A stretch of DNA of 36,674 bases from Macrostomum lignano (taxonomy: Eukaryota). How positions within the stretch are numbered: position 1 is the first letter of the stretch; every line of letters begins with the position of its first letter. The position numbers were made by a program, and so were the translations under genes. Shown piece after piece: positions 3,300 through 36,075 of this stretch. The notes under the pieces are model-generated. The model did no database searches and was not told where the DNA came from. It saw only the letters and a list, made by a program, of their open reading frames with translations. The stretch is from the NCBI GenBank assembly GCA_002269645.1, contig NIVC01004079.1, positions 1 through 36,674 on the forward strand, given 5' to 3'.

Positions 3300-5684
3300 T
3301 CAGGCGGTGCCGTTGTCACCCTGACAGTTAGGACTGCAGCCCAGCGATTCTTCGTAGCCTTTCTTTGTCTTCAGTTCGTGCACGCGTACCGTCTCACCCT
3401 CCTGCTGTAACGATTAAAGATTATGTTGTCATTGGATTGGATTGAAAAAGAAAAAATTGGTACTGAACCAGTACCGCATGGTTGAAGGTTTATTTTCTTA
3501 AAAATGATAGAAACTTTCTTACGTTATCCTAACGGTTCGTAACGCAGTCGCTAAGCATTATTGAAGCATCACCTGACGGTTACGACTTACCCCCACCTCG
3601 ACAGTCTTCTTGTAGTCAGCTACAAAAGTGCTATCGAAGGCTATGAGGTTGCGAGTGGCCTCGGAAATCAGCACAGTGCCCTGTTCGCATTGGGCCTCGA
3701 TGCTCTGAGTGGCAAACAACGTCGTACCAAATAGGCAATATCGCGGAAAAATCACGCCCACAACGGCAGCTACAACAGGGCCTGCAATGTTGCGACTATT
3801 GTTTCGAGCAAAGTTCTGATAACCTTCAAATTCGCAAACAACTACAAATTGGTATGGCCTAAAACTCACCTGAATGGATTGCAATCTGAAGGTGCATCGA
3901 AACGCCTGGCATGTGGGCGACCCGGATGTGCAGGGCGTGGTGCCTCAAGTCGATGCTTAGAACAGCTAGCTCGTGAGCATGTCGCCTGCCATTGCGAATG
4001 GGTACTCCGCTGACTATGAGCAACCAATCGCCACTTGTCTGCAGCTTGTGGCAGTCGAATTTCTCGATTCGTTCGTCGAACATGTTGTACAAACCGTTCA
4101 GAATCTCGATCACCTGTCCTGGCTGGCTGTTGTTGGCGACAAAAGCAAAGTTGGCGAGCCGGACCAGCATGATGCTGGCCTCGGTGAAAGTCTCAGCGGA
4201 CACCTTTTTCCTCAGGCGCAGTTGCTCAATAATAGACTGCGGCATCATGCCGTAGAGCAGGCGGTCGGCTCGCTCTCGGTCCTTAGTCATGGCGCAAGCC
4301 TGAGTCATTAGGGCTCCAGAGTACTGGCTAATGTCATCCATCATGGCGTGAACTATGAAAATGACGATCGGACTGGATATTAGTGCGATGAGGAAGAAAC
4401 CCAGGTTGAGCATTAAAGAATTATAATCGTCCAACTTGTCTGTTGCAATCGAGTTTAATGCGAATTCGCCTAGACTGACAAGCAATCCTTGCTGACCTTC
4501 CATGTAGATGGACATGTTGTTCAACCACAGCGTGGATGCCTCCAGGCCTCCCATGTTTTGCGGCTCAGAGCGAGAAAGAATCTCTGATCGCATTGTCTCA
4601 ATGCTGGATACGACCGGGGCGAGTTCCACTGCCGTCTGGTTGGTCAATTCGCGAACAATATCACTGTACTCCTTGGAATCTTTGATCTGCGCTCGACCCT
4701 GGAAGTAAGTGCGCAAGTACCACTGGTATTCGCTGTCCATGCGGAAGCCACCCTGGGCGTAGAATATTCCTCCCAGACTCCGTTCAACACCCGTGTTCTC
4801 CTTCGCCATTACTAGAAGTAAGTAGGCAACCATATTCTTCCACAGAGAGCCATCTTTACTCTGTTGAATAGTATCCGTGATCCAGTTGATGAACACTCTG
4901 ATCACGTCGTTTGTATAAAACCTGATCTCCTCCAGCGGGTTGCGAAAATCCGGGTTGAGGCTAATATCTCTCCGTCTGATGTCCAAGATCTTCTGGAAAT
5001 CGGCTTTGCTTTCAAACGCAGTCATAAAAGTGAGCTCTTCAGAGTCCTGGTTCCACGAGCGCAGCGCCGCAAGACTGAGATCTGTCTGGCGAAAGATCTC
5101 TTCGATTAGGATTCGCGTCTCGGACGACTTGCTCGAAATGAAGAGAGCGACTCGATCTCGTTCTTTCTGCAAGTTGTCAATCAGTGAGCCGGTTTCCATA
5201 GCGAAGCGCATTGCGTCTCGTATGTTCGACTTCATCTTGCTCTCGTTGCTGGAGTCGACTAAGTTGCGGATTGTCACTCCAGCCAAGGCCGCTATGGGCA
5301 GCATCAGAAGGAACATGATCTTGGCCACCTGGCGCTTTTTGCCTGCAAATGTGAAATTTGCCCATTTTAGAAAAAGTGAACCGCAACTTTTTATTATGAA
5401 ATACGTGCTGACATTATTTTGAAATTTCATGATTTCGCACCAATCTGGTCGTTGCTGCTGTAAAACCAGTTGTAGCACTTCCCCAGCACGGATGTGTAGA
5501 GCAGCCTTTCCTGCACTATGCGATTGATGCGGCTGACATTGCCGCTGGTTTCGCTGCCGGAGTTTAGCGAGTTGCTAGAGCCGCTCACCTTTCTGTTCAT
5601 AAAGGTGCTGCTCATCGATGAAACAGACGGCGTGATAGCCGGAGTGATTTTCACCTCAGGCCTGAGCATTCCCTTCTTACCCAT
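3300..5684 (-). CDS. Membrane NIT-domain guanylate-cyclase-family protein with degenerate catalytic site, about 670 aa; exons 5684-5441, 5342-3870, 3781-3591, 3404-3300
   Basis: GCCATGG start at 5684; three GT-AG introns (98, 88, 186 nt) give one continuous frame. TM1 IMFLLMLPIAALAGVTI; NIT motifs LQKERD and AKENTGVERSLG; TM2 LGFFLIALISSPIVIFIV; signalling helix RERADRLLYGMMPQSI; class III cyclase fold motifs LYNMFD, SGD-LLIVSGVP-RNG-HA, IHSGP, PRYCLFG. Confidence 0.9.
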
Positions 5685-8290: not shown

Positions 8291-9887
8291 TCACACTGCC
8301 GCTGAGCCCCTCAGATTGAACACCTCCACCAGTAGAGGATCGAGATGATCGCCCAGGGAGCCGACGCTGTGGCAGAGGTTGCTGAAGTCGGTGGCGAGCC
8401 TGTCCAGGTCGGACAGTCGATTTAGCAGGTCGAAGAACACAGCCCGCGAACGGGCCATTGGCCACGTGTGCTCCACGTGGCGCCAAAGCAGCTGGATGTA
8501 GCCTTTCTGCAGCCGGTCGATGAGCCGCATATTGCGCAGCAGAGGTCGCGATGGGTTGTAGAAGTCAACCAGCTGCAGCAGGGTCAGAGCCAGCCTGTCG
8601 CCTTCGCTGGCGGCTGAAGAAGAGCGCAGGAATTGCCGATAGCGGCTTAGCAACTGCGTCCCAGCAGGCCAGGAGGACAGCGACATGGACAGGCTGTCCA
8701 ACGGCATTCGATGCAGGCCGCCCAGTTGGTTTGACTCGAATTGAAAGCTGTCCTCCTCCGAGCTGTAGGTGCAGGCGCCCCGCATCAAGGTGAAGTGGAA
8801 CACACCGCCCTTGATGAGTTCTATCATGTCCGCCTGGTCGATCATACTGTGCTCGGGCAGAAGCTTAACAAATTTCACGAACCGCGTTACAAAAGACAGG
8901 GTGATGGCGAACGGGGTCTCCAGAGCGGAGCTGTTGCTAGAGCGGATCTTCTCTGAGTCGTCGCTGCCTACGTTGTCCATGACATCGTTGATAGCGGAGC
9001 GCACAGCATCGAGCAGCCAGCGGCAGGACTGCGACAAAGGTCGCCTGTCAGACCAGGCCAGTGTTTCGGATTCATCCTCCTCCGGGGCCAGTAGCTGCAG
9101 CACCGTGGATTGCTGCAAACTCGTGCTGCATGGGCTACGGTGGGCTCGCTCGCGCCGCTTCTGCAGCTGCTCAGCGCCTAAGAAGTTGACGTCGATGCAA
9201 TGTACGATTCAAAAACACAACACTCGTACGAAAAAATGTTGAAATAAGCTCACTCAAATTTGACTCACCCAGAATCCATTCCTTCTTCATCCCAACCCGG
9301 AAGCATTTGCTTAGTCGACAGGCTGGACAGAATTTCCTCGTGGCGACGGTCACTTCGCAGTTGTTGTCAAAGTTGCACTGGTGCGGCTAAAAATGGCATT
9401 AAAAGCTTTAGCAATGGTGCTCTAATTACCTGTAAAATACTAAGTTAGACCTTCTCACCCTTTCCTTCACTGCATTTCTGCGAAAGAACGCCTTGCAGGA
9501 CTCGCAAGTGACGGCGTCAAAGTTAAAGCCCAGAGCCTTGTCGCCGCAAACGCTGCACTGCTGCTGCGACTGTTGCTGCTGCTGGAGCTGCTGCTTCTGT
9601 AGGTGCTGTGACAGTTGTGCCTGCTCAACTGTCGGGTTAGCTGTGAGCAGAATTTTACTTCGTCTTTTGCGACGCTGTGGCATCATCTGCGCTTGCGACT
9701 CCCATGTGGCTGTTTCCGCTGAAGACAGCAGTGTTGTTGCTGACGAGTCGCTCGGCGGTGATTGGCACATGCCAGGGCCCGGGTTCGACTCCTGTTTGAC
9801 CGGTGCCGCTGCAGCAGACAGTTGGGCGGAATCGCTCGTCAGATAGTAGTCCAGAACGGAGTGCTGGGTATGAATGAGGAAAGGCAT
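8291..9887 (-). CDS. HR96: Nuclear hormone receptor, NR1J (HR96/DAF-12-like) group, about 477 aa; exons 9887-9459, 9386-9269, 9177-8291
   Basis: C4 zinc finger 1 [29 protein letters not shown] with the NR1J-type P-box ESCKA; finger 2 [36 protein letters not shown]; LBD with ..D..L.KGG and AF-2 [14 protein letters not shown] introns of 72 and 91 nt are phase-consistent. Start Met is uncertain (9887 or 9950; an acceptor at 9907 suggests an upstream exon). Exact orthologue not determinable. Confidence 0.9.
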
Positions 9888-12140
9888 GTTAGTCAGAAAA
9901 CTGGAACTGTTAAAATCCCAGTGGATGACTTCAAGTCCTCTAGCTAGCATTAATTTTGATCTTTGGAACTTTTGAAGACTCAAAGTCCCGAGAGCAAGTC
10001 CACGATAAGAAAGATACAAGAAACCGAAGCGCAGAAACACTCAGTAGCCTCGGTATTTGCTTTGATACCTTCCAGTCAGGCTGAGGAGAAACAAGAGATA
10101 AAGAATAAATGCAGAAACTTTGGTGCCTCAGCGGAGAGCAATCAAGTGCAATTGTACCGCACGAGTGCGCGTTGGCTTGTTTACCACACGCGTTAAATCG
10201 CTCAGACAGGCGGCCTGCTGCCGTATGTGCGTGTTCTACGCCTGCCTGCCAGACCGCACGGGCTAGTTGCATCTGGGCCCCTCTAATCGGCTGCTAATAG
10301 GCTTTTAGTCAATTCAATTGTGGCTTTGATGCCTTCACAACCAGAAGTTTGCATGCCAAGGCTGGTTGTAGCTCGTACAAGCGTATTAGGCACTAATGAG
10401 CTGCGAATGCTAGCACAGGACAGGACGTACCGTTATATAACGAAAGACCAACTGCATGAACTTACACTGCTTGGATACATTTTTTATAATATTTCTCTGC
10501 AGTTCCTTCGACTCGCAGTTAGTCGAACTGGCTGCCCAGTAGCTTCTATCATTCGGCGACTGTTGACTTCTTCGAACTCGAATTCTCGGACCTGTTCGGA
10601 AGAGTGCTTATTGAAAGTTTCAATCGAAGCGACTACACTCGAAGCAGAAAATCTTCAACTAACAACTGGTTGGTCGAGATAATTTTTCTCTTTACTGCCA
10701 TTGACTGTCTTAATGCTTTGTGTGCATTAGCTTATATATTCATGCAAGCGTACAAACTACTATTTTCTGGACATGCGAGCGAAAACTGGTGCACAGATAG
10801 GCAAAAGAAGAGTTACAATACACGCGTCCTGCACAGGCACTTGCTTGCGGCCTGCCTGCCTGCCCGTCTGCTTGTCTGGCTGCCCAACCTAAGCCGGCGC
10901 AAGTGTACTTTGCTGTCGGTAGGCGGCCCGCCCCAGAATTCAATTTTGATAAGCGGGGCAACTCCGGGTGCCCGCTCGGGCTCGCATAGCAGAGAGCTCA
11001 TCGCAGATCGCGGCACAAGCAGATTGCATGCACTCGCGGGATCGTGGCATTTTTTTGCGCATTCAATTTTACATGTTTCACGGGGTTAGCATTATAAATG
11101 TAACTGGATTCGCAGTGTCTGCAGTTTCTCACGAGCCCGGATTTTAGTTGCTAAAATGCGATCATTCAAGGGAGACTTCAAACATGTTGACGCAACGCCT
11201 TCCGCCAGATCCAATAACGGTTGGCTGTACCAATTTCCTGATCCAAATGCAAACGAACTTCTAAACATCTTGTTTTAAACATCTTGTTTTACTCCGACAA
11301 CTCCCATTCCATACATGTATTTCGACGCAACAGAATTTCGATTGCAACCTACAGCGTCTGTAACAGTTAAGGCTAGTCAACACTGCCATCAAGTGTGGCT
11401 ATTTGTCACCTGCAGATCGCACGGCTTGCGTATAGTTTTTTGTCGCTTTGTACATCAGCATCAATTGTGCGATTTGACGGCTCAATTAACGACTGTATTA
11501 ACGAGCCTTTCAAAGCACCTATGCACTGATGGCGTCATCCAACTCTGTTGGTGACCTTACGAGCGCACGAGCGTCAGCATCAGTGCACGCCATCAATTCG
11601 CCATTATTTCACAATCCAGATTCATTTTTTGCCCGACACGACACTGAAAAGTGAAACTGCGCAGCGGATGCGGCAGCTCGGAGCGAATTTAGCACAGAGT
11701 TTACAAGCAAGTGGCAAGAGAAGCCCTGGCTTTGGTTACAGCAGGGTGCCGCATTGTGGCTTGCTTTGCCACTGCCAGATGCTAGCGGTTCTGAGGCTTA
11801 AAAATCAGTGATGACGACAGCGTACAAGTTTCATTGGCTGAATTCAGTTTGGCAAATTTGCTAAAAAGCAAATCTTGTCGCGGGTAAATGCAAGCTCTTG
11901 TTATTAACTTGAGTCTGCCGGGTTTGAAAAACAATATCTGCGCTCGTAGTGCATTCAAACTAAAACCAAGAGAATTTTATGCTGCTTTTGTTTTTCTGAC
12001 AACTGACATCTAATTAGTGTGCTCTCCGCTCCAAGTTCTTTGGCTAAAGATTAAAGTCTTGATGATATGTATTTTCTAACAGTAACAGCCTTCAGTCTTC
12101 CTCACCGAACAGCCGGAAGATTTTATGGTAGTTGCTTAAA

Positions 12141-12437
12141 ATGCAGTCTCTTTTCTTGGCTTGTGCACTGGGATTCCTACTTTCAGTAGTGAAAGTGGGC
12201 CTGCAGTTTCAAAAATGGTTTAAAGTTGCTTTCACAAATTTTAAAAAAAAATCAGCTTCAAGTCAAGAGTTCTTAACCAGTGTCACCTCCAGGTATGGAA
12301 GAGAGTCCTTAACCAGTGTCACCTCCAGGTATGGAAGAGAGTCCTTAACCAGTGTCACCTCCAGGTATGGAAGAGAGTCCTTAACCAGTGTCACCTCCAG
12401 GTATGGAAGAGAATCCTTAACCAGTGTCACCAGATAA
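12141..12437 (+). CDS. Candidate secreted repeat-peptide (RYamide-like neuropeptide) precursor ORF, truncated by a LINE insertion
   Basis: aaaATG, hydrophobic N-terminus [17 protein letters not shown], then KKK, then four (ES/EF)[10 protein letters not shown] repeats. The frame continues for two more copies after the LINE. Could equally be a non-coding minisatellite. Confidence 0.25.
12272..12433. repeat. 36-bp tandem repeat, left part (unit ttaaccagtgtcacctccaggtatggaagagagtcc, about 4.5 copies)
   Basis: Near-identical units read directly from the sequence. Confidence 0.95.
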
Positions 12438-13976
12438 CGTCATCGGTCGGGCAAAACGCTGCTTTGCCCAGCTGCGCAGAGCCATCGGGCCGACTTGGGG
12501 CCTCTCGCCTAGAACGGTCCGTTGGATTTATACCGGCATCATCCGGCCCAGTATCACATACGCGAGTCTCATCTGGACTAGCGTGCTGGAGCAGAAGGCC
12601 GCCCGTCAGCGGCTGTACCAGCTTCAGGGCAGCATTTGCCGTGCCATCACAGGTGCGTACCCGTCCACCCCTTACGAGGGGCTGAACACTATCCTTAACC
12701 TACCTCCGCTTCACCTATTTATTAGGGCGGAGGCTATGAAGTCTGCCTCCCGGCTTATCAGAGATAAAACGTTAAATAACGCGCCCTCTGGCTTTATGCC
12801 AATGAAAACATTAATCCCGCATATGGACTTTGTCCGCCGCGACCTTAACAACATCCACATGGACCTGGGCAATGTGGATAGTCGACCTCCCGCCCTCAAC
12901 ATCAGGAGGGGCTTCAAGACCGCCATCCCTGGCCGAGACAACATTCCGCTGGATGTCGGTGTGAACCGGCGCAGCCAGGGCATTCACTGCTTCACCGACG
13001 GCTCGCTGTTCAACGGCCGCGCTGGAGCGGGTATTGCCATTTTCCACGAGGGTAAGATGCTTCTCCAGGAAAGTCTGCACCTCGGTGAGAACACCTCAGT
13101 TTTCCAAGCTGAAATTTGCGCCATTGAGCAGTGTGCCCAGCAACTGTTTCAGGCGAACATTAATAATTTTGACATTAATTTCTACACTGATAGCCAAGCT
13201 GCTATTAAGGCCTTAACCACTGAGAATATCTCCGCTGCTACAGTATCTCAATGCCACCGCAGTGTGCAATCTCTCTCAGTCCTTAACAGGATTAGAATTA
13301 TCTGGACACCTGGTCACAGCAACATCCTGGGCAACGAGCTCGCGGACTCTCTCGCCAAGGAGGGCAGCAACCCAGACGGCAACCACCGTCTGATGAGGCT
13401 ACCCACCCCCAGGTCGCAAGTCACCCGCCATATCAACAGGTGGCTCCATCAGCAGCACCAGCTCCACTGGAACAGCTGCACCGAGTACAGGCAGAGCCGC
13501 TCTGCCATGCCTAACCTGAACAGGAAAGTCTCTGATTATCTGATTTCGCTTAACAGAACCGACCTCAGGGAGATGTGCATGGTCCTAACCGGCCACGGAT
13601 TCTTCCAGAGACATATATCGTTGCAAACCGGTTGCCCTCCCACCTGTCCCTTCTGTGGCATAGGAGAGGAGACCGCGGAGCATCACGTCACCTTCTGCCC
13701 TTACTTCAACAAGGCGCGGCACAAATACCTCGGCCACCCCCAGCGGATGGACGAGCTGACCACCGCGGACAATATCCGAGACCTCCGCGCCTTCGTCCGG
13801 GACTCCGGCCGGATGAGGGTCGCCGATGCCTCCACTGCGGACCTGCCGACTACTGGCGGGGACTGGGCGCACCCCCAAGGCTAATCCTTGTGCTCTTTTA
13901 CCTTGGGGTTGCGATAGGGGCCTCGCGGCCTATTCGCGGCGCCTGCGCCCCCCGTCAGTAGTAAGTAAGTAAGTAA
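12434..13976 (+). mobile_element. 5'-truncated non-LTR retrotransposon (LOA/Lian-like, I group): RT C-terminus, RNase H and Cys/His knuckle, (GTAA)n tail
   Basis: [21 protein letters not shown] (post-RT region typical of LOA-type elements); RNase H with FTDGS, FQAEI, YTDSQ, WTPGHS, GNELAD; CPFC...ETAEH...CP; stop at 13884; tail gtagtaagtaagtaagtaa; identical 16-bp flanks taaccagtgtcaccag at 12418-12433 and 13974-13989. Confidence 0.92.
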
Positions 13977-14684: not shown

Positions 14685-16262
14685 ATCCAGAGCTTTTGAG
14701 CCTAAAACTGACCCTGACGACAGAATATACAGAATACTCTGTGGACCCTGACAGTGCCGGGAACAAAGACTAAAACATAATTATTAAGCACAAGCGCTTC
14801 TTTAGCACAAGCAATCAAGCGCCGAGTCTTCAAACCCTTAGAACCCTTAGTAACTGGGTAGCATATCAATCAGTACGGAACCCTCGCTTGTGTCTGGCTT
14901 GTTCGGTCATGGCTAGACAAAAGCTTGCCAATTAGTCAGTGCAATTTTTTAAGCTTGTAATCAGGCACTTTGTACTCGTATCTCTAGGCCATAGTAGTAA
15001 GAAAGAAATGTTCGGCGTTTGAGTCAGACTTTATCATTTGCAATCTTGTACTATGTGCTGGTACGTGTTTTACAGACTAAAAATAGTGACTTTGCGACCC
15101 AGCGAGGGCTTTGACTCAGCCGGAAAATGTGAACTTCTCTCTTGATTCGGGGAGAGGAGGCGGGGAGCCAAAAGTTTTTTCTCTACTCCCAGTGCCCGAA
15201 AGCTGCCTGCTATCTCCAGATCATTCTGTGCATGCAATGCACTGTCAAATCAAGAAGAAGTACCATTAATTCCTGATCCAGTATTTAGTGCGCCCAGCTT
15301 TTACCGCTCAGTCAAGAGAAGAGAGAAAGGTAGAAAGAAATTACGGCTGGCTACTCAATTCCGATTTCGTGAGCCAGCTCTCGGGGCGGGTAGAGGTGGG
15401 TCAACTGACCTGATGCGACCCTCACCCTTTGTTAGCTAACTTACATTAGATTTCCTAGTCTATGTCCAATTTTCCATGGAGTTTCAATGCCGGCAAGATA
15501 AATAGACTGCATCTGACTTCCAGGGTACACTGGCAAGGTGAACATATTAGGCCGCTCCCCAAGATTCTCCGCGCATTCCTAGATGGGCGGGCAGCTCCCA
15601 GTCATGGGAATCAGGACGAACCCTCCTAGGGCAGGGGACTATCGTGTGTACTTTTTTCGGGAGACTTCTTTCGCTTTCCTAATCCCCTCCGAGCAAGGGG
15701 CTAGAAAGGAAGACCTTTTCCACGCATAGCGGACACTGGGCTCACGTCCTCCTGATGGACAGGAAAGAAAGAAGAGGGGAAATGAAATATCATTACGGAA
15801 AGGCTTGTAAAAGTTCAGATTTGAACCCAGGTTGGGCTACAATGCGGGCTGCAGGAAGGAAACGGTGCGGGTCTTCTTAGGGTTGCAGATGGCGGCACCA
15901 GTCAGGATGCGGGATCGGGATCTTTTCAGGAGGGCGGGATAGTGGGCTAAACGCGCTGGAAAGGATCGAGCTATAGGCGAAGAAGCATTGGTTCAAATTT
16001 CGGGGGGCACAGAGTAGTCTGGATGGACAGATTTGGCCAAGCAGAGAAGCCGCACCCCCCCTCCACCCCCGCGTCTTCTAATGCAAATCGATTTTGCGGG
16101 CTTTCTCTTAATGCGGACTGGGTATATCGGATTCCGTGTAATGTGCCCTGTCTCCAAGCTCAGACTGACACGTGCCTTTGCAAATATTCTCCTCTACCTT
16201 TACTTTTATAAGCTGCTATAGTGCATAGAGAGCTGCCCTGCCCCAGAGGTCAAGGCTGCTGG

Positions 16263-16913
16263 AACACAGATCGAGTCTCTGCAACACAGAGACGCTGAAA
16301 CACAGATCGAGTCTCTGCAACACAGAGACGCTGCAACACAGATCGAGTCTCTGCAACACAGAGACGCTGAAACACAGATCGAGTCTCTGCAACACAGAGA
16401 CGCTGCAACACAGATCGAGTCTCTGCAACACAGAGACGCTGCAACACAGATCGAGTCTCTGCAACACAGAGACGCTGCAACACAGATCGAGTCTCTGCAA
16501 CACAGATCGAGTCTCTGCAACACAGAGACGCTGCAACACAGATCGAGTCTGCAACACAGATCGAGTCTGAAACACAGAGACGCTGCAACACAGATCGAGT
16601 CTGAAACACAGAGACGCTGCAACACAGATCGAGTCTCTGCAACACAGATCGAGTCTCTGCAACACAGAGACGCTGCAACACAGATCGAGTCTGCAACACA
16701 GATCGAGTCTGAAACACAGAGACGCTGCAACACAGATCGAGTCTCTGCAACACAGATCGAGTCTCTGCAACACAGAGACGCTGCAACACAGATCGAGTCT
16801 GCAACACAGATCGAGTCTGAAACACAGAGACGCTGCAACACAGATCGAGTCTGAAACACAGAGACGCTGCAACACAGATCGAGTCTCTGCAACACAGATC
16901 GAGTCTGCAACAC
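16263..16913. repeat. Compound minisatellite of 16/18/20-bp subunits (gcaacacagatcgagtct(ct), gcaacacagagacgct)
   Basis: Direct inspection; it explains the three repetitive minus-strand ORFs at 16206-16982. Confidence 0.97.
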
Positions 16914-17868
16914 AAGTAACACTCTAACGCAAGAAGTCAAAACAATACAGCAGCTTTGCGCAGCTTCTATGCCAGTAGGCATTCTGTAGCTTTCTGGCGT
17001 AACTTGTACTGCTTTTAGCCCCCAGTTTTTTAAATGCAGACATTAGTTGCAGTTGCAGTCGACTGTGTGGCTTAATATCGAAGCTGCAGTCAAGACATCA
17101 AAATATCAAGCAAAAAAACACTGTAGCTTCCAACCCTAGCCTACTGCGGCAGATGCTGGAATGGCAATGGCGAACGGTCGATCTGTGGTAGAAGAGTATT
17201 TCAAGCGAATTGGCCTTACACAGTTTCCCAGAAGGCAAATCACAAAGTACTAGCAGTCTAAGAGTGTATCGAAATTGCAGCATTTGCAGGCGTCAGAATT
17301 ATATTTAATCGATTTCTTGCACTGCGAATTCACGAAATAATTTTCTTTTGACAACGACGGTGATTACAAAAAATGCTACCTGCCATTGGCGAAACTGTAG
17401 CGCGACTAAACTTCAGGTGGGGACGCCAGAGACAGAGAGACCGAAATCCACAGGTGATGTGTGACCATTGACTATTCAGCCAAGATCAAAACGACTTTGA
17501 GAAGCAACGACAAAAGAATATTGATTGCAACATTTTGCACATAGTAAATTTAATTGCACAGATTAACTGGTCTCTCACTGGTTGGCGCCAGGCAATTTGG
17601 AAACTGGGAAATTTGTACACGTCAAAGAGATGCAGAGAGAGTCGATAAATGAAAACAAATGCCTAGCAGACGGTCGGATCGGTTGGGTGAAGGAATGCGA
17701 CTGGTTGATACCAATTATTACTCGAACAGTATGTACACCTGCTGGGAAGGAGTGTATTGAATACTAGATGCGCGTATTGAGGTGCTGAGTTAGGGTCATT
17801 GGAGAGCTCATTACAAACTAGCGAATGTTGATACCAGCGTATCTATATATCTGTACTAAAATTTAAAT

Positions 17869-19647: not shown

Positions 19648-20245
19648 ACAGTGAGTGACTGAGGAGAGTGAGTCGCAGAGAGTGACAGTGTGACTGAGGG
19701 ACAGTGTGACTGAGGACAGTGAGTCACAGAGAGTGACAGTGTAAATGAGGAGAGTGAGTCACAGCGAGTGACAGTGTGACTGAGGGACAGTGTGACTGAG
19801 GGACAGTGTGACTGAGGGACAGTGTGACTGAGGGACAGTGTGACTGAGGGACAGTGTGACTGAAAAAAATGAGTCACAGAGAGTGACAGTGTGAATGAGG
19901 AGAGTGAGTCATAGAGAGTGACAGTGTGACTGAGAAGAGTGAGTCACAGAGAGTGACAGTTTGACTGAGGAGAGTGAGTCACAGAGAGTAACTGAGGACA
20001 GTGAGTCACAGAGAGTAACTGAGGACAGTGAGTCACAGAGAGTAACTGAGGACAGTGAGTCACAGAGAGTAACTGAGGACAGTGAGTCACAGAGAGTAAC
20101 TGAGGAGTAACTGAGGACAGTGAGTCACAGAGAGTGACTGAGGAGAGTAAGTCACAGAGAGTGACAGTATGACTAAGGAGAGTGAGTCACAAAGAGTGAC
20201 TGAGGATAGTGAGTCACAGAGTGACTGAGAGTGATGCAGAGTGAC
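19648..20245. repeat. Minisatellite built on 16-bp gacagtgtgactgagg and related gagtcacagagagt subunits
   Basis: Direct inspection. Confidence 0.95.
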
Positions 20246-20607: not shown

Positions 20608-21150
20608 TAACCATAAACCCCACCAACCATAAACCCCTAACAACCATAAACCCCTACCAACCATAAACCCCCACCAACGCTAAACTCCCAGCAACCATAA
20701 ACCTTAACAACCATTAACCCCCAACAACCATAAACTCCCACCAACCATAAACCCCTAACAACCATAAACCCCTACCAACCATAAACCCCCACCAACGCTA
20801 AACTCCCAGCAACCATAAACCTTAACAACCATTAACCCCAACAACCATAAACCCCAACCAACCATAAACCCCCACCAACCATAAACCCCCACCAACCATA
20901 AACCCCCACCAACCATAAACCCCTAACAACCATAAACCCCCACCAATCATAAACCCCACCAACCATAAACTCCCACCAACCATAAACCCCACCAACCATA
21001 AACCCCCACCAACAATAAACCCCACCAACGCTAAACTCCCACCAACCATAAACCCCCAACAACCATAAACCCCCACCAACCATAAACCCCTAACAACCAT
21101 AAACCCCCACCAACCATAAGCCTTAACAACCATAAACTCCAGAAACCATA
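20608..21150. repeat. C/A-rich minisatellite, 16-17-bp unit accaaccataaacccc (G-rich on the minus strand)
   Basis: Direct inspection. Confidence 0.96.
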
Positions 21151-21528
21151 AACTTCACGAGTCACAAACCCCAACTCCAATAACAATAAGCAAACCTTCT
21201 CTGGGGCACAGGTGTCGAGGCTTTTTATTTAAATTACCAAGGCATCTTCAGTCGCCAGATACACAGGTATGCAACACCCAGTAAGTTGCACTAAATAGTT
21301 TATATGCATGAAAGCGCCACGAAAGTCCGTTTCATTTTTGAACCGATTGATCTGCGCAGCGGCTACACTCTGCATTTTTACTTTCTGTCAACGCGGGTTT
21401 TCATTTGTTTAACTGCGAAAAACTGTATGCCATAAATTGAGCAGAAACATCTCTTGGATGGCAACAGGCTGTGGGATCAAGTTTAAGTACAGTTCAACCT
21501 CAACTACAGTGCAACTTCAAGGTTCGGG

Positions 21529-22053
21529 CGCTAGAGAGGGGGTTAGACTGGGCGTCAGAGAGGGGGTTAGACTGGGCGTCAGAGAGGGGGCTAGACTGGG
21601 CGTCAGAGAAGGAGTTAGACTGGGCGTCAGAGAGGGAGCTGGAATGGGTGTAAGGGAGGGGCTAGAATGGGTGTAAGGGAGGGGCTAGAATGGGTGTAAG
21701 GGAGGGGCTAGAATGGGTGTAAGGGAGGGGCTAGAATGGGTGTAAGGGAGGGGCTAGAATGGGTGTAAGGGAGGGGCCTAGGATGGGTGTCAGAGAGGAG
21801 GCTAGGAGGGGCGTCAGAGAGGGGGCTAGAATGGGTGTCAGGTAGGGGGCTAGGATGGGTGTCAGGGAGGGACCTAGGATGGGTGTCGGAGAGGGGGCTA
21901 GGAGGGGCGTCAGAGAGGGGGCTAGGAGGGGCGTCAGAGAGGGGGCTAGGAGGGGCGTCAGAGAGGGGGCTAGGAGGGGCGTCAGAGAGGGGCTAGGAGG
22001 GGCGTCAGAGAGGGGCTAGGAGGGGCGTCAGAGAGGGGCTAGGAGGGGCGTCA
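21529..22053. repeat. G-rich 23-24-bp minisatellite with three successive unit variants
   Basis: Units gagagggggttagactgggcgtca, then gggaggggctagaatgggtgtaa, then gagagggggctaggaggggcgtca. Confidence 0.96.
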
Positions 22054-22686
22054 GCAAGTACGCCAACTATAATGAGGCCGCGCTATCAAATGCCCGATAG
22101 TCATGTCAACCCAGCCAGTTTCCGTTCGCGGAAGCACCCTATTGATGATGGGTGTGATGTTATTTTTCTGGTTTCTAGGGAAAATAGAGGTCAGGCAATC
22201 CAGCTCCATAGTCAGAGCTTGTCACACATGTTGCCGGAATCGATCAGTCTATCGCTACTCCTGATCCGAAATATGGACATAAATCTAAAACCGGATTAAT
22301 AAAGCTGAATGGGGTTGACCCTTAGGGCCGTATGCAGAAAGCTCTGTCTAGGGTAGTCCGGTCTTGAAAAGCTAGTCTGGACTTGGATTTGGTATGCAGA
22401 AACACAAAGTTAGACCAGTCTACTATAGACCACAGATTGTATAAACACTAGATGGCTCACTCTCGATTCCTTCAGTGGAGGCCAAATTCTCACTGTCTAT
22501 GGTTGGAATCCCTCGCTCGCGAGACTTCGCCCCCCCCCGCGCCAGCAGCTTATAACTAGCGTAGAGCCAGCAAAAAACTTTTCTCTCACTGATTCTAGCA
22601 CACCCAGTTCTTTCTCCTGCAACAACTAGATAGAATTATATATTTGACACTGAACACCGAAGGCGAAGACCAACAAGCTTCTGGTA

Positions 22687-23778
22687 ATGAACTCAAAAAT
22701 CTGCTGTGCTGCAGGCTGCAAAAATAAGGCAGTTACCTCTCCGCCTCAAAACACCCCTATCAAGCTGCACCAATTTCCTCAAGATATGGCAACCGCTACG
22801 CGATGGATGCAGATTCTGGAGCTGCCGTTCCCGCTCGAGGAAGTTCGATGCAGACTTAAAAGTGTGCAGCGATCATTTTGTGGAAGAGGCGTACTCTTGC
22901 CCAGCTGCCATGCGACATGAACCAGGCTCTCGGCTGAAGTGGAACGCTCTTCCCGATCTGCAGCTAGTGATGCCTCGATTGCTGCCAGAGAATCTGGAGT
23001 CTGTCATCTTGCGGAGTGATGAGGAGGCGGACAACATGTACCCGCCACAGCTAACCAGGGAGACACAGCTAGTCACATCCGAGCAGGACGCAGCAGAACT
23101 GCAGCTTCAACAGCCTGCCGGCGCGTCCAAGATTGCGGCAGCGGTTCCCTCGCCCTTGTTGAGCAACGAAAAGACTCGACAGAAGAAAAAGCTAGATCAG
23201 AAACGGCGACAGAAAGCAAAGCAGAAGCAGCTGAGGCGTCAGAAGTCAATAGTGAAGAAGCTACGGCGTCAAGCCCTAAAGCTAAAGGCCCAAGCTGCTC
23301 TCAAGAACAACCTGGTCGGTCGGCTGCTGACCAAAGAGTATCGTCAGCGAAGACTCAAGCCTCTTCGGATGTGCTGGTCAGCAGAGGACATGGCCGCTGC
23401 TATTCAACTGCATCACAAGAGCCCTGCTGCGTATCGAATGCTGCGAGAAGATTGGGAGCTACCGCTACCATCGCACTCTTCATTGAAGCGACGGATCAAA
23501 ACGTACTTTGCGTCAACCGGGCTCTGCCCTGTAACTCTCAGTGGGCTATCCAAACACATGCAAAGTGGCGACAGTCGTGACCGAGTCTACCTTGTGCTAC
23601 CTTGCGCTTTGATGGTATGAGCATTTCCCGCTCGGTTCGTTACTATCAATACCAGGACGTGATCACTGGGCTTGCCACAATACCAGGAGTGCCAGGCGCA
23701 GCCAACCCTGTAGATGAGGTTGTTGTGGCTGTACTGCGCGGTGTTGGATCAAACTGGAAGCAGCCGATTGCGTACTAC
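22687..23778 (+). pseudogene. THAP-domain P-element-superfamily (THAP9-like) transposase, frameshifted twice and 3'-truncated
   Basis: THAP C2CH motif CAAGC...LHQFP...RW...VCSDHF split by a +1 shift near 22858-22861; basic coiled coil; WSAEDMAAAIQL...SPAAYRML...LPLPSHSSL (P-transposase HTH region); FDGMSI (first catalytic Asp) and VLRGVGSNWKQPIAYY after a second shift at about 23590. Similarity ends at 23778. Confidence 0.88.
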
Positions 23779-27327: not shown

Positions 27328-30256
27328 GTGCCCTCTCTTCTATCCACTTCAATCTAAAAACTCTGCACAGTATGAAACCAAGTAGCAGTAGCATTGAGAT
27401 TGAAATGTCCTGCAATAGTTCGCTAGAATAGCGGATTAAGCTTTCTGCTGTACAAAATGAAAGCACAGGCTGGGCAGAAGTCTCAATTCGAATGACAAAC
27501 CATTTACACTGGCCGCTGTTGCGGAACCCACCTCTGACTGGCCTGGGGCAGCCGCCCCGGGCGGTGGCGGTAAACGCGATAGGGCTTGGACCCTTCGTCT
27601 GCGCTGCCGAATCTTGGTTAGCAAGTCGGTCAGCAGGTCGTGGAGCGCCGGCTCCATCTCGCCACTCTCCAGCAGGTCGCCAGCGTGCGCTTCAAAGAAG
27701 TCCGCATTGACGGCGATGAAGCGCTCTACGCTGCCTCGAACTGCGTCCGGTGAGGCGAACACGCGGCTGGTCCGGCGGAGAACGGCAACTGCTGACACGA
27801 CCGAGCGGAACCAGGCCCACAGAAGGCATGCCTGATGGTAGGAGCCATGATCGGGGCAGGCAGGTTGGTGCTGCTGCGGTTTCGCGGTGATTGCGCTGAA
27901 GCTACAGTTGGACGACGCGTCGAACGATTCGAGTCGATTCCACAGTTCCGTGTTGTGCTGCAGTCTCGCGAAGAACTGTACGGGGTTGAGCTCTCGGACC
28001 AGGCGTTTCAGCGCCTCTTCCGTGCACAGAATTTGCCGACCCTCTGACGCCTGGTTGACTTCAGACGCGAGCAGCTTCTCAATATTATGTTGAGAGGCAG
28101 CGGTGTCGCTCAGCAAAGCTACGGTTTGTGCAACCAACCGCATGCGCGGCATGCGTACTGTTGAGTACGAAGCGTAGGCGATGCTTCTCATGTCGCGTGC
28201 GCTCACATTGGCAACAGCCTGTTGTAACTGCTCGACGCCTCGGGCCAGAGTTTGATATCCTACGATGTCGGATAGTTCGGAGCTGCTCAGCTCTTTGTAA
28301 AATCCGTTCAGCAGATCGAGATCGATATCAGTAAAGTCGGCAGAGCCCGAATGCCTTAGACGCTTCGTTAGATGAATGATTGCTTGGGCGGAAGATACTG
28401 CAAATCTGAAGTGCACGAGTACCAATTCGAGTCCTCTCTGTTTGCTCGCGGTGGCTACCGGATTCCAAAATGTGTTGTCAGGCATATTGTGGTGCCTAAT
28501 AAGACTCAGATGGGACTGAAAGGCGACTCGCTTAGAAAATCTGGCGTTGTGAATCAGCAAAACCTCGCTGAAGTTTAGCACAATCTGGTCGCATAAAAGC
28601 AGCATCAATGTGTCTAGCACGTGAGTTAGAAAGCTTTGAAAACTGGAAACGCTGCCAGAACAAGTTGGGCCCAAGAGGCACAAAATTCCCGCGACACATC
28701 GCAGATCCCGAGTCGCCTTTATCATCGCTTCAGATTTATTAATCTCGTACAAATCTACGAGATCGGACAGATAAGCTTGCAGACTTGCTTCCAATGTGGT
28801 TAGACCTCCGTTTTCTACCGGCTGGAGGCGCAGTACCTGATTTTTAAAGAGATTAACCGCCACGTCCAGATAAATGCAGTCGCCTTCGTGCAGCGCTCCG
28901 GCTGGTGAAGTCGCCGCAAGATCGAAACATCTGCGACACCGTCCTCTAGACGGGCTTTCGCTTCCGAGTACAACCTGCCAAGTAACTTCTGTCGGAGCTC
29001 ATCAAACAGGCGATTCACTCGGAACAGACTGACCATGTCGGGAATCAGCTGACAGAGCGCTGGGTCTGAAAAATCTAATCGCCGAACCAGTCGATCGAGC
29101 AGCACAATGAGGTTTGTAAGGAGGCCAGGAATGTCAACAAGGTGCCTGCAGATTGATCTAGGCTCCCCTGTGAAATGCTGCACTACCGACTTCAGCAAAG
29201 TGAATGTCTGACTTGTGATCTCCTCTGCGCTGAGGTTGATTATGTATCCGTAAGCCGAGTATAATACAAACTGGAGAATCTCTAACGAGTAATACTTGTA
29301 GTTGAGCTGAAGTATAAGCTTTCCATTCTCCTTTAGCAGCTGGCTTTTGCTGTCCTGTGGCCAGGAGCGATGCTTATATAGTCGAATAAAGTCATGGAGC
29401 AGAAACGAATGGCACGGAATGAGCGAGGCTGAGTTTGATAGTCTCAAATGAACGTCGACGCCAACCGCAAACGACTGGGCCAGCAGCAGGCAGGCTGCTT
29501 CCACATTTGACGGCTGCCATCTCAGGCCCCAGTAGCCGAACGCAAACGGGCATAGACAGGGATCGTACCGGACAGTCTTCCAGTCAATTGGAGCGGCGAG
29601 GATGTGCACCCAACAGTTGACCACGGAGTTGTGCTGGGCTAGCTCTTTCAGAGCCTTGGCACGCCAGTCAGAAAAGTCGCGCACCTCGCCAATCAACCGA
29701 CAGTGCTGACACTGCTCGGACCGGCAGAAAGCCTCGTTGAGCTGGTCGACGGCGCTAGTGTCACACTGGGCTGCCAGACGCTCCTGCGCAGCTAACCGCT
29801 CTTGACTATCGCTGGAGGCGTTCTTTCGTCCATTCAAGTGCACTCCGAGAAAGTCTTGATAGTACAGATGCAGCATTTCGTTCGGCAGACTATAGAGAGC
29901 ACTGCTGTACCATGCTCTAAGGTGCGTGCTTACCGTGCGGAGCTACTCTCGCCCCTACTTGCATTTTGTCGAGGGTTTTAAACTCTCCCTGATGAATGGT
30001 TTTAAGGCGTCTATTGCCACGCCTAAGGGGTAATTTAAAGCACACGTTGCACAAGCACTCGTCTGTTCTCGTCCTAGATTGCAGAATTTCTTTTGTGACA
30101 GTGTTGCGGCTTCGCTTCACAGTGAGTCACACCAGACGCGAGGTTAAAATTCCTGAGCAGTTGAAAATTCTGTCTGATTTGGACACTGTCTGCTGCTGCG
30201 CAGCGTTTGTACCGTATTATTCTATCGGTGAGAACAACAGCACGCTTCGGGCAAGA
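27328..30256 (-). CDS. Large multi-exon gene for an unrecognised, mostly alpha-helical protein (at least about 860 aa); exons 30256-30133, 30022-29959, 29889-28884, 28836-27532, 27409-27328; both ends open
   Basis: Two long overlapping ORFs (353 and 475 aa) with protein-like Leu-rich composition. Flanking small exons join in phase through GT-AG introns (110, 69, 122 nt). The junction between the two big ORFs needs a 47-nt GC-AG intron or a frameshift. Confidence 0.7.
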
Positions 30257-34633: not shown

Positions 34634-36075
34634 ATGAACAACTTGCAGTTCACTAGCGATGGAGCCGACTGGCAGCCGGAGTCGCCGAAGGAGCAAAAGA
34701 GAAATTTAGCTGAAGAAAATCCCATAGCCATTATAGAAGCCTTGTACCAGCGATACATATCGCCAGATAATGAGCCAAAGGTCAAAAGCGTTGAGGCAAT
34801 CGAAAAACAGCTATGGGATGTTGTCAATAGTGAAAAGAGCGAAGAACTGCAAGTGAAGGAGAAAAGAAATGGTAAGGAGACTGGCTGGGTGCATTTTCCA
34901 ACTCTAACAAAGGAAAAAAGTACCTTTAGTGCTTAATTCATTCTTACACTATAGCTAAAAATTCGGAAATGGAAATAGAAAAAATTTCTTCCGAAAATAC
35001 ATTACAGTCTTCTGCAATGTTTTGTGCATATCTCCGATCAAACATTACAGATCCGAGTCCTGGCCCCACCGCTGATGAGCAGCCTGCATTGTAAGTCAGA
35101 TTTTTTTTCTTACACTCTTGATCAACTGCTGACTCTTGATCAACTGCTGACTCTTGATCAACTGCTGACTCTTGATTAACTGCTGACTCTTGATCAACAG
35201 CTGACTCTTGATCAACTGCCGACTCTTGATCAACTGCTGACTCTTGATCAACTGCTGACTCTTGATCAACAGCTGACTCTTGATCAACTGCCGACTCTTG
35301 ATCAACTGCTGACTCTTGATCAACTGCTGACTCTTGATTAACTGCTGACTCTTGATCAACAGCTGACTCTTGATCAACTGCCGACTCTTGATCAACTGCT
35401 GACTCTTGATCAACTGCCGACTCTTGATCAACTGCTGACTCTTGATCAACTGCTGACTCTTGATCAACAGCTGACTCTTGATCAACTGCCGACTCTTGAT
35501 CAACTGCTGACTCTTGATCAACTGCTGACTCTTGATTAACTGCTGACTCTTGATCAACAGCTGACTCTTGATCAACTGCCGACTCTTGATCAACTGCTGA
35601 CTCTTGATCAACTGCCGACTCTTGATCAACTGCTGACTCTTGATCAACTGCCGACTTTTGATCAACTGCTGACTCTTGACTAAACTTTTGATCTACTGCC
35701 GACACCTTAGCCCACAACAATAAAACTTATTGCAATAATTCCCTCTCACAAATGAACGCAGGCAAATCTCTTTCCCTGAGATGGCTTTGAAACCAAACGG
35801 TGGAGACGCAGTGACGGCAGCCCACGTCAACCTATTGCGCAATGACAGCCTGTGCGACATATTCACGTGCAGTGGGCTGTTCCAGCCGAATTGCGACAAC
35901 CAAACAGCCCTAATGATTCTGGCGAGCCGACAAGACCTCTCGGGTGTTGAATATTGCTGTTTGTTTCTAAAAGATGGCGACGGCGACTCGCTATTCGGAC
36001 CTCTAGTCGAGTCCGCTCTGCTACAATCCGAGCAGATATTTCGACACCTGTTAGAGAAGCTCTGTCGCAATGGAT
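34634..36075 (+). CDS. Ankyrin-repeat-like protein; exons 34634-34871, 34955-35090, 35762-36075; probably continues downstream
   Basis: Donors G|GTAAGG, TT|GTAAGT, T|GTGAGT and acceptors actatag|, aacgcag| give phases 1, 2, 1 in one open frame. Exon 3 contains PNCDNQTALMILAS...ESALLQSEQIFRHLLE (ankyrin-like helix pairs). The start codon is uncertain. Confidence 0.6.
35114..35703. repeat. Intronic 18-bp minisatellite tcttgatcaactgctgac, about 32 copies
   Basis: Direct inspection; lies inside predicted intron 35091-35761. Confidence 0.97.

What the first reader, a model, noticed from the sequence alone, without database searches (positions are those of the whole stretch)
3591..4200. NIT-domain guanylate cyclase with both halves of the active site lost: candidate pseudo-cyclase
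Seen: against the class III GC consensus, the first metal-binding Asp (IYFSDI) is Arg (MLVRL, codon about 4159-4161). The guanine-specifying Glu of KVETIGD is Gln (KLQTSGD). The Asn/Arg of DTVNTASRMES are Phe/Ser (TTLFATQSIEA). Only the second Asp and RYCLFG remain. Established: cyclase dimers need the two Asp from one subunit and Asn/Arg from the other, so this chain completes neither half-site. Inference: the gene is intact (no stops over 670 codons, clean splicing), so it may be a maintained catalytically dead receptor acting as a decoy, dominant-negative or scaffold subunit for nitrate/nitrite/NO signalling. NIT-GCs are known from invertebrates such as Platynereis; I do not know of a described dead member.
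Basis: partly seen in the sequence, partly recalled or inferred. Interest (0 to 1): 0.78.

Follow-up and report, generated by a model that had tools for sequence, protein, structure and literature searches.

The report
Catalytically dead flatworm NIT receptor cyclase
This flatworm (Macrostomum lignano) gene encodes an intact membrane receptor with a normal-looking nitrate/nitrite-type sensor domain, but its guanylate-cyclase domain has lost most residues needed for catalysis, so it is probably a maintained "pseudo-enzyme" subunit, a type not yet described for this receptor family.

Summary
A four-exon minus-strand gene (5684-3300) encodes a 670-aa TM-NIT-TM-cyclase protein. It is 100% identical to Macrostomum lignano UniProt A0A1I8HH80.

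Aligned to human GC-A and about 140 relatives, it has Arg for the first metal Asp (R476), Gln for the guanine-specifying Glu (Q516), and Thr/Phe/Ser in place of D/N/R of FGDTVNxxSR. It also lacks the RIGIH Arg and the KGKG Lys. Only the second Asp, the PRYCLFG Arg and the Cys remain.

The gene is not decaying. The ORF and splice sites are intact, and a neutral simulation gave no intact ORF in 300 runs. Its NIT domain is as conserved as the family median. Non-catalytic cyclase changes are conservative, and AlphaFold2 predicts a GC-A-like fold.

It is the fast-evolving sister of a canonical M. lignano NIT-GC paralogue.

It is not unique. Of 82 NIT-GC representatives, 13 keep only the metal half, 10 keep only the N/R half and 10 keep neither. 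No paper found describes this.

Most likely it is a sensor-competent, catalytically dead subunit that modulates active NIT-GCs by dimerisation. Expression, orthologue constraint and activity could not be tested. Flatworms reportedly lack NOS, so endogenous NO signalling is doubtful.

The parts
5441..5684 (-). Exon 1. Start codon at 5684-5682. Encodes a Ser-rich, predicted-disordered cytosolic N-terminus (aa 1-81).
   Evidence: The UniProt model P0001 begins just after the in-frame upstream stop. pLDDT is below 50 here.
3870..5342 (-). Exon 2 (aa 82-572): TM1, NIT domain, TM2, signalling helix and the first two-thirds of the cyclase-homology domain.
   Evidence: tblastn of relatives covers 5391-3868.
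3591..3781 (-). Exon 3 (aa 573-636): PRYCLFG and the degenerate TTLFATQSIEA segment.
3300..3404 (-). Exon 4 (aa 637-670 plus the TGA stop). The tandem NAGNAG acceptor (3404 or 3401) gives isoforms with or without Gln637.
5269..5325 (-). Predicted transmembrane helix 1 (aa 88-106).
   Evidence: Hydropathy. Helix in the AF2 model.
4495..5184 (-). NIT (nitrate/nitrite-sensing type) domain, aa 135-364, lying between the two TM helices and so predicted to be extracellular. Keeps LQxER (R143), R205 and GxER (R269).
   Evidence: Pfam PF08376, E=2.4e-20. 26 of 32 family-conserved columns are kept, rank 41 of 82.
4333..4416 (-). Predicted transmembrane helix 2 (aa 391-418).
   Evidence: Part of one continuous predicted helix running from the NIT domain to the cyclase domain.
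4201..4332 (-). Signalling or dimerisation helix (aa 419-462) carrying the conserved ...ERxRxxxLLYxMxP... pattern.
3402..4200 (-). Cyclase-homology domain (aa 463-637), interrupted by introns 3869-3782 and 3590-3405. The fold is retained but the catalytic residues are degenerate.
   Evidence: Pfam PF00211, E=1.1e-29. GC-A match, E=7e-41. AF2 model against 9bcv_B: TM 0.92, rmsd 2.0 A. Only 39 of 69 family-conserved columns are kept, the lowest of 132 domains.
4159..4161 (-). Codon for R476, at the position of the first metal-binding Asp.
4039..4041 (-). Codon for Q516, at the position of the guanine-specifying Glu.
4027..4029 (-). Codon for D520, the retained second metal-binding Asp.
3886..3888 (-). 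Codon for Q567, at the position of the conserved Arg of 'RIGIH' (93% Arg in the family).
3702..3725 (-). Codons for T592...F595...S599, replacing D...N...R of FGDTVNxxSR (the transition-state Asn and Arg).
3324..3359 (-). C-terminal motif GYEESLGCSPNC. It is shared, as GFxxSLxCMPGC, with the canonical M. lignano paralogue and with nemertean and abalone orthologues.

Best explanation
The gene encodes a selectively maintained NIT-domain membrane receptor whose cyclase-homology domain can no longer make cGMP, that is, a pseudo-cyclase.

Origin (shown). It arose by duplication of a canonical Macrostomum NIT-GC (UniProt A0A1I8GKN0). It then evolved faster than that paralogue, most of all in the linker and cyclase domain.

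What is retained (shown). The sensor fold and its ligand-site arginines, the two TM helices, the long signalling helix, the cyclase fold and a clade-specific C-terminal motif are all kept. The residues lost are those for metal binding, guanine recognition and transition-state stabilisation.

Inferred mechanism. Class III cyclase domains act as head-to-tail dimers, so this chain most likely pairs with an active NIT-GC subunit. Its closest paralogue is the obvious candidate. Both composite sites of such a heterodimer would be defective. The protein would therefore act as a ligand-sensing attenuator or modulator of cGMP output, or alternatively as a non-catalytic scaffold.

Ligand (inferred). The ligand is more likely environmental nitrate or nitrite, or something unknown, than endogenous NO, because flatworms are reported to lack NOS.
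For: Catalytic loss:
- Residue calls from the GC-A alignment and the 143-domain alignment.
- Key columns read R,Q,D,Q,R,C,F,S against the canonical D,E,D,R,R,C,N,R.
- Residue roles follow Tesmer-type structures as summarised in PMC4174876, and ODR-1/DAF-11 in PMC5225109.

Maintenance:
- 670 codons with no stop and canonical splice sites.
- In a neutral simulation to the minimum lineage-specific divergence (21% of residues), the mean was 6.7 stops and 0 of 300 ORFs stayed intact.
- 26 of 32 conserved NIT columns are kept, at the family median.
- The 26 changed non-catalytic conserved cyclase positions are conservative: mean BLOSUM62 +0.81 against -1.29 for random replacement, with 0 of 5000 random sets as high. 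The 7 catalytic positions average -0.86.
- The AF2 model has pLDDT 82.7, and its cyclase domain superposes on GC-A with TM 0.92.
- The C-terminal motif is conserved.

Origin:
- Sister to P0005 in 197 of 200 neighbour-joining bootstraps.
- Tajima relative-rate test in the cyclase domain: 39 query-unique against 7 paralogue-unique changes, p=2e-6.

Precedent for subunit specialisation in the family:
- 33 of 82 NIT-GC representatives lack one or both half-sites. They include amphioxus, bivalve and annelid proteins.
Against: - There is no direct evidence of transcription or protein. The UniProt entry is a prediction.
- No orthologue from another species is available, so constraint after the catalytic losses cannot be timed. 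A recent loss of function cannot be excluded.
- Heterodimerisation is inferred only from family behaviour.
- The query is accelerated in all domains, including NIT. That also fits generally relaxed constraint.
- The random-replacement null ignores genetic-code bias.
- AF2 confidence partly reflects the family alignment, not this sequence alone.
- I could not survey all M. lignano NIT-GC paralogues.
Confidence: 0.6

Rival explanations
1. The gene is a recently inactivated or unexpressed duplicate on its way to becoming a pseudogene. Its open reading frame is a leftover of earlier selection, and the catalytic losses reflect relaxed constraint rather than a new role.
For: - It evolves faster than its paralogue in every region, including the NIT domain: 43-53 against 21-24 unique changes.
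- Its cyclase conservation is the lowest of 132 domains.
- There are no expression data and no orthologues in the databases.
Against: - The ORF and all splice sites are intact.
- Neutral drift to even 10% residue divergence leaves an intact ORF in under 3% of simulations, and to 21% in none of 300.
- Replacements outside the catalytic residues are strongly conservative.
- The NIT ligand-site residues and the C-terminal motif are retained.
Confidence: 0.15
2. It is still an enzyme subunit. Paired with a complementary partner it would contribute to one weakly active or unconventional site, using the retained D520, R586 and C588. Alternatively it catalyses by a non-canonical mechanism.
For: - The second Asp, the PRYCLFG Arg and the specificity Cys are kept.
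- The family contains many apparent alpha-like and beta-like half-site subunits, which suggests heteromeric enzymes.
- Heterodimeric receptor cyclases are known, for example ODR-1/DAF-11 (PMC5225109).
Against: - Neither half-site is complete. The metal half lacks Asp1 and the RIGIH Arg. The other half lacks Asn, Arg, Glu and the KGKG Lys.
- The phosphate-binding turn 'DIVGFT' reads 'RLANFA'.
- A C2-C2 dimer that lacks only the metal residues is already inactive (PMC4174876).
Confidence: 0.1
3. It is a stand-alone non-catalytic receptor. The dead cyclase domain would have been repurposed as a protein-interaction or nucleotide-binding output module, signalling independently of other guanylate cyclases as a scaffold rather than a dominant-negative subunit.
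For: - The fold, signalling helix and C-terminal motif are retained while the chemistry is lost.
- Arg at the Asp1 position next to the retained D520 could fill the metal site (inference).
- NIT-GCs with a similar profile, an intact sensor and a degenerate cyclase domain, recur in amphioxus, bivalves and annelids.
Against: - No interaction partner or motif has been identified.
- No known precedent was found for class III cyclase domains acting as scaffolds.
- The data here cannot separate this from the heterodimer-attenuator model.
Confidence: 0.15

Closest known systems
Platynereis dumerilii NIT-GC1 (Jokura et al., bioRxiv 10.1101/2023.08.02.551600 / eLife RP91258)
   Same: It has the same TM-NIT-TM-cyclase architecture and belongs to the same family, the NIT-GCs first noted by Moroz et al. 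2020 (PMC7400543). The sensor domain carries conserved arginines.
   Different: NIT-GC1 has 'a highly conserved cyclase domain' and makes cGMP after an NO donor is added. The Macrostomum protein lacks Asp1, Glu, Asn, Arg and further catalytic residues. Its host reportedly has no NOS.
Macrostomum lignano paralogue A0A1I8GKN0 (P0005)
   Same: It is the sister gene (197 of 200 bootstraps) with the same architecture. Identity is 38% in the NIT region, and both carry the C-terminal G[FY]xxSLxC(M/S)P(G/N)C motif.
   Different: The paralogue keeps the canonical FSD, KVETIGD and FGDTVNTSSRME motifs. It evolves 2-5 times more slowly. It is the candidate active partner.
Half-site heterodimeric cyclases: sGC alpha/beta, mammalian AC C1/C2, C. 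elegans ODR-1/DAF-11
   Same: They have the same fold and head-to-tail dimer logic. They show loss of catalytic residues in a subunit that is nevertheless maintained (PMC4174876, PMC5225109).
   Different: Each of those subunits retains one complete half-site, so the heterodimer has one working site. This chain retains neither, so no partner can complete a canonical site with it.
Uncharacterised degenerate NIT-GCs in Branchiostoma (P0064, P0076, P0088, P0094), Dreissena (P0116), Mya (P0096) and Owenia (P0087)
   Same: They have a NIT domain of normal conservation combined with a cyclase domain lacking both half-sites.
   Different: They are in different clades of the neighbour-joining tree (P0064 is the only one of them in it) and carry different replacement residues, so the losses look independent. 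None has been characterised. Only the query combines Arg at Asp1, Gln at Glu and Gln at the RIGIH Arg.

Membership tests
NIT-GC (NIT-domain membrane guanylate cyclases) | TM - NIT - TM - class III cyclase domain architecture without a kinase-homology domain | tested here: met
   Pfam finds NIT at 135-364 and Guanylate_cyc at 463-637. Hydrophobic helices lie at 88-106 and 391-418. The AF2 secondary structure agrees.
NIT-GC (NIT-domain membrane guanylate cyclases) | NIT domain with the conserved helix motifs and arginines thought to bind the ligand | tested here: met
   LQxER (E142/R143), R205 and GxER (G266/R269/G272) are kept. 26 of 32 conserved columns are retained. The role of the arginines is taken from PMC7400543.
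NIT-GC (NIT-domain membrane guanylate cyclases) | Phylogenetic placement inside the animal NIT-GC clade | tested here: met
   The best non-self hits are all NIT-GCs. It is sister to an M. lignano NIT-GC, inside a clade with nemertean and abalone sequences.
NIT-GC (NIT-domain membrane guanylate cyclases) | Catalytically competent guanylate cyclase domain (two metal Asp, Glu/Cys for guanine, Asn/Arg for the transition state) | tested here: not met
   The columns read R476, Q516, D520, C588, F595 and S599, plus Q567 and the loss of KGKG.
NIT-GC (NIT-domain membrane guanylate cyclases) | NO-, nitrite- or nitrate-dependent cGMP production | not testable with these tools
   This needs a cell-based cGMP assay like the one used for Platynereis NIT-GC1.
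Class III nucleotidyl cyclase fold (PF00211) | Sequence and fold similarity to solved cyclase catalytic domains | tested here: met
   phmmer against PDB matches GC-A at E=7e-41. Foldseek matches 9bcv_B at E=5e-20, TM 0.92, rmsd 2.0 A.
Obligate heterodimeric cyclase subunit (sGC alpha/beta, ODR-1/DAF-11, AC C1/C2 type) | Retains one complete half-site, either both metal Asp or Asn+Arg plus the base-specifying residues | tested here: not met
   It falls in the 'neither' class: Asp1 is lost, and Asn, Arg and Glu are lost.
Obligate heterodimeric cyclase subunit (sGC alpha/beta, ODR-1/DAF-11, AC C1/C2 type) | Physical pairing with a co-expressed partner | not testable with these tools
   No expression or interaction data are available, and no multimer modelling tool is offered.
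Pseudogene | Disrupted reading frame or splice sites | tested here: not met
   The CDS has 670 codons without a stop and GT..AG introns. An intact ORF is improbable under neutrality.
Pseudogene | No expression and dN/dS near 1 | not testable with these tools
   No RNA-seq data and no orthologous DNA are accessible.

The most novel reading that the evidence does not exclude
NIT-GCs may be, as a family, combinatorial heteromeric receptors like soluble guanylate cyclase. They would have alpha-like, beta-like and fully dead regulatory subunits. On this reading the Macrostomum protein is a dedicated ligand-sensing inhibitory subunit. It would turn detection of nitrate, nitrite or another NIT ligand into suppression of cGMP synthesis by its active paralogue. 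That would be a naturally evolved, ligand-gated dominant-negative cyclase, in an animal that lacks NOS.
Probability: 0.25. Interest if true: 0.7.

Novelty: new variant of a known kind. Interest (0 to 1): 0.55.

Why it matters
NIT-GCs were recognised only in 2020, and just one member (Platynereis NIT-GC1) has been assayed. The few papers on them treat the family as ordinary cyclases.

A maintained member with an intact sensor and a dead catalytic domain changes that picture, especially alongside the finding that about 40% of sampled family representatives have lost one or both half-sites. It implies that subunit pairing, and not just ligand binding, shapes the output. In that case single-gene expression assays and knock-downs could mislead.

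Macrostomum lignano is a tractable model with RNAi and transgenesis, and it reportedly lacks NOS. It would therefore be a clean system for asking two questions: what animal NIT domains sense, and what a pseudo-cyclase does.

It also adds a concrete case to pseudoenzyme biology in a fold where fully dead receptor subunits appear not to have been described.

Tried and rejected
- Alignment artefact. Rejected: two independent alignments (HMMER to GC-A; MAFFT of 143 domains) and the residue spacing relative to Rv1625c agree. No acidic residue or Asn/Arg lies nearby.
- Alternative or mutually exclusive exon with canonical residues. Rejected: tblastn with canonical cyclases finds only the three known coding blocks in the 36.7-kb window.
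- Finding orthologues or close paralogues:
  - The k-mer-prefiltered protein search returned only self and one sea-cucumber protein.
  - A NIT-only profile search returned 5 distant hits.
  - A search with the paralogue returned no other flatworm sequence.
  - The exhaustive HMMER search found nothing closer than 35% identity.
  - The metagenome scan found nothing.
  - As a result, dN/dS and shared-substitution tests could not be run.
- Evidence of expression. The exact-protein contig look-up found no record, and the spliced model was not accepted. UniProt accessions appear in no paper.
- Literature on dead cyclases. 'Pseudo-cyclase' gave 0 papers. My recollection of the GC-A D893A dominant-negative work (Thompson and Garbers 1995) could not be verified in the library, so I do not use it as evidence.
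- Specificity switch to adenylate cyclase. Rejected: the base-specifying pair is Gln/Cys, not Lys/Asp, and the metal site is gone anyway.
Full report
**What is there**

The finding lies in a minus-strand eukaryotic gene. I rebuilt it from the sequence.
- The exons are 5684-5441, 5342-3870, 3781-3591 and 3404-3300, and all introns are GT..AG.
- The CDS is 2013 nt, 670 codons with no internal stop.
- The protein is 100% identical to UniProt A0A1I8HH80 of the free-living flatworm Macrostomum lignano, annotated 'Guanylate cyclase domain-containing protein' (P0001).
- That model differs only by one Gln at a NAGNAG acceptor (3404 vs 3401), and by translating the 5' leader back to the upstream stop.
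- Pfam finds a NIT domain (aa 135-364, E=2.4e-20) and a class III cyclase domain (aa 463-637, E=1.1e-29).
- Hydropathy gives two TM helices, 88-106 and 391-418, flanking the NIT domain.
- The architecture is therefore TM-NIT-TM-cyclase with no kinase-homology domain, which is the NIT-GC architecture of Moroz et al. 2020 (PMC7400543) and Jokura et al..
- tblastn shows this is the only cyclase gene in the window, with no hidden alternative exons.

**Check of the observation**

- In the HMMER alignment to human GC-A (E=7e-41), IMLVRLANF lies under IYFSDIVGF. Asp1 is therefore R476, codon 4161-4159.
- KLQTSGD lies under KVETIGD. Glu is therefore Q516, and Asp2 (D520) is kept.
- RYCLFGTTLFATQSIEA lies under RYCLFGDTVNTASRMES. 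This gives D>T592, N>F595 and R>S599.
- A MAFFT alignment of 143 related cyclase domains gives the same columns.
- The spacing matches the numbered catalytic residues of Rv1625c.

I found further losses.
- The Arg of 'RIGIH' (93% conserved in the family) is Q567.
- 'KGKG' is 'GQEG'.
- The phosphate-binding turn 'DIVGFT' is 'RLANFA'.

The division of labour is summarised in PMC4174876. One subunit supplies the metal Asp residues. The other supplies the base-specifying and transition-state residues. PMC5225109 describes the same logic for the obligate heterodimer ODR-1/DAF-11. By those rules this chain completes neither half-site. A homodimer, or a heterodimer with any partner, would lack a canonical active site.

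**Is it a decaying gene?**

Four indirect tests argue that it is not.
1. *Intact ORF.* I applied random substitutions to the CDS up to the minimum lineage-specific divergence observed (21% of residues). This gave a mean of 6.7 stop codons, and 0 of 300 runs kept an intact ORF. Even at 10% divergence only 2.7% stayed open.
2. *Normal sensor.* 26 of 32 family-conserved NIT columns are kept, including LQxER, R205 and GxER. That ranks 41st of 82, which is the family median.
3. *Selective degeneration of the cyclase domain.* Only 39 of 69 conserved cyclase columns are kept, the lowest of 132 domains.
   - The 26 changed non-catalytic positions carry conservative replacements. Mean BLOSUM62 is +0.81 against -1.29 for random replacement, and 0 of 5000 random sets scored as high.
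   - The seven catalytic positions average -0.86.
4. *Predicted fold.* AlphaFold2 with a 50-sequence alignment gives mean pLDDT 82.7, with both domains mostly above 90.
   - One continuous helix runs from the NIT domain through TM2 into the cyclase domain.
   - The cyclase domain superposes on the cryo-EM GC-A cyclase domain with TM 0.92 and rmsd 2.0 A.

A short C-terminal motif, GYEESLGCSPNC, is also shared with the canonical paralogue and with nemertean and abalone orthologues.

There are caveats. The null model ignores genetic-code bias. AF2 confidence leans on the family alignment. None of these tests shows expression.

**Origin**

- The exhaustive HMMER search found no relative above 35% identity other than the protein itself.
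- The nearest is a second M. lignano NIT-GC, A0A1I8GKN0 (P0005), which keeps all canonical motifs.
- On a neighbour-joining tree the two are sisters in 197 of 200 bootstraps. They sit inside a clade with Tubulanus and Haliotis sequences.
- Tajima relative-rate tests show the query is faster everywhere, but most of all in the cyclase domain (39 vs 7 unique changes, p=2e-6) and the linker (24 vs 5). The NIT region gives 43 vs 24.
- Canonical members share 50-67% identity in the cyclase domain across phyla. The query shares 35-42% with any of them.

This is the signature of a lineage-specific duplicate released from catalytic constraint but not from structural constraint.

**Family context (beyond the finding)**

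I classified 82 NIT-containing representatives that have all key columns:

| Half-site state | Number |
|---|---|
| Canonical | 49 |
| Metal Asp pair only ('alpha-like') | 13 |
| Asn/Arg only ('beta-like') | 10 |
| Neither (including this protein) | 10 |

- Other proteins with a conserved sensor and a degenerate cyclase domain come from Branchiostoma, Dreissena, Mya and Owenia.
- The sample is the top 150 hits to this query, so the proportions are indicative only.
- The six papers that mention NIT-GCs do not discuss dimers, heterodimers or inactive members.
- 'Pseudo-cyclase' retrieves no paper.

**Mechanism**

*Shown:* loss of the catalytic residues, and retention of the sensor, helices, fold and tail motif.

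*Inferred:* class III domains work as head-to-tail dimers, and the dimerisation helix pattern (ERxRxxxLLYxMxP) is kept. The protein therefore most plausibly dimerises with an active NIT-GC, with A0A1I8GKN0 as the first candidate. In such a heterodimer one site would lack the metal ligand. The other would lack Asn, Arg and Glu. The chain would then attenuate or reshape cGMP output in a ligand-dependent way.

A stand-alone scaffold role, residual activity or recent pseudogenisation remain possible. I rate them at about 0.15, 0.10 and 0.15.

Platyhelminthes including M. lignano are reported to lack NOS (PMC10728431). The ligand is therefore more likely exogenous nitrate or nitrite, or something unknown.

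**Comparison and novelty**

By architecture, NIT motifs and phylogeny it is a member of the NIT-GC family. It fails the catalytic criterion, and it also fails the criterion for a half-site heterodimer subunit of the sGC or ODR-1/DAF-11 type. I therefore file it as a new variant of a known kind, a pseudo-cyclase NIT receptor.

The sequence itself is already in UniProt, uncharacterised.

I set interest at a moderate 0.55. Pseudoenzymes are common in general. This one is well defined, sits in a barely studied receptor family and in a tractable model animal, and points to unrecognised subunit specialisation across the family.

**Not testable here**

Expression, orthologue dN/dS, dimer partners and enzyme activity could not be tested (see the next steps).

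Noticed in passing
Relatives P0004-P0119 (not in the window); Across 82 NIT-GC representatives, 13 keep only the metal Asp pair, 10 keep only Asn/Arg and 10 keep neither. The degenerate forms include proteins from Branchiostoma, Dreissena, Mya, Owenia, Tubulanus, Mytilus, Diadema and Glandiceps. This suggests widespread sGC-like heteromeric design in the family, which the NIT-GC literature I could search does not mention.
   Followed up: partly
window 3324-3359 (-); also P0005, P0003, P0006: A short C-terminal motif, G[FY]xxSLxC(M/S)P(G/N)C, is conserved just after the cyclase domain in this clade (flatworm, nemertean, abalone). Its function is unknown. The two Cys residues hint at lipidation or metal or disulphide chemistry.
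   Followed up: no
window 3399-3404 (-): A tandem NAGNAG acceptor (cagcag) sits at the start of exon 4. UniProt's model uses the downstream AG, which removes Gln637. Both choices are in frame.
   Followed up: partly
P0005 (M. lignano A0A1I8GKN0), aa ~526/527: The database model of the canonical paralogue lacks about 46 residues of the cyclase domain, corresponding to VPIRNG...IAIHSG in the query. This is probably a missed exon in the annotation rather than a real deletion.
   Followed up: no
window 8291-10040 (-): A neighbouring gene encodes a nuclear hormone receptor. It has a C4 zinc finger (PF00105, E=1e-10) in ORF 9426-10040 and a weak ligand-binding-domain match (E=0.003) in ORF 8291-9118, with a poly-Gln tract.
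   Followed up: partly
window 12266-13884 (+): A retroelement fragment: a 486-aa ORF with an RNase H domain (E=2.6e-13) and a weak reverse-transcriptase-like match. It is preceded by a 36-bp x 4.6 tandem repeat at 12266-12431.
   Followed up: no
window 16258-16914, 19680-20221, 20609-21153, 21526-22054, 35114-35679: Five satellite-like tandem arrays with periods of 36/250, 16-27, 17, 24 and 18 bp, up to 32 copies at 80-93% match. They create long spurious ORFs on several frames and strong local GC/AT skew.
   Followed up: no
window 27436-29876 (-) and 22706-23620 (+): Long ORFs of 475, 353 and 304 aa with no Pfam match. They are probably exons of uncharacterised flatworm genes.
   Followed up: no
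Literature (PMC10728431): All surveyed Platyhelminthes, including M. lignano, are reported to lack nitric oxide synthase. Yet M. lignano keeps at least two NIT-domain cyclase-family genes. This is a hint that animal NIT domains need not be tied to endogenous NO.
   Followed up: partly
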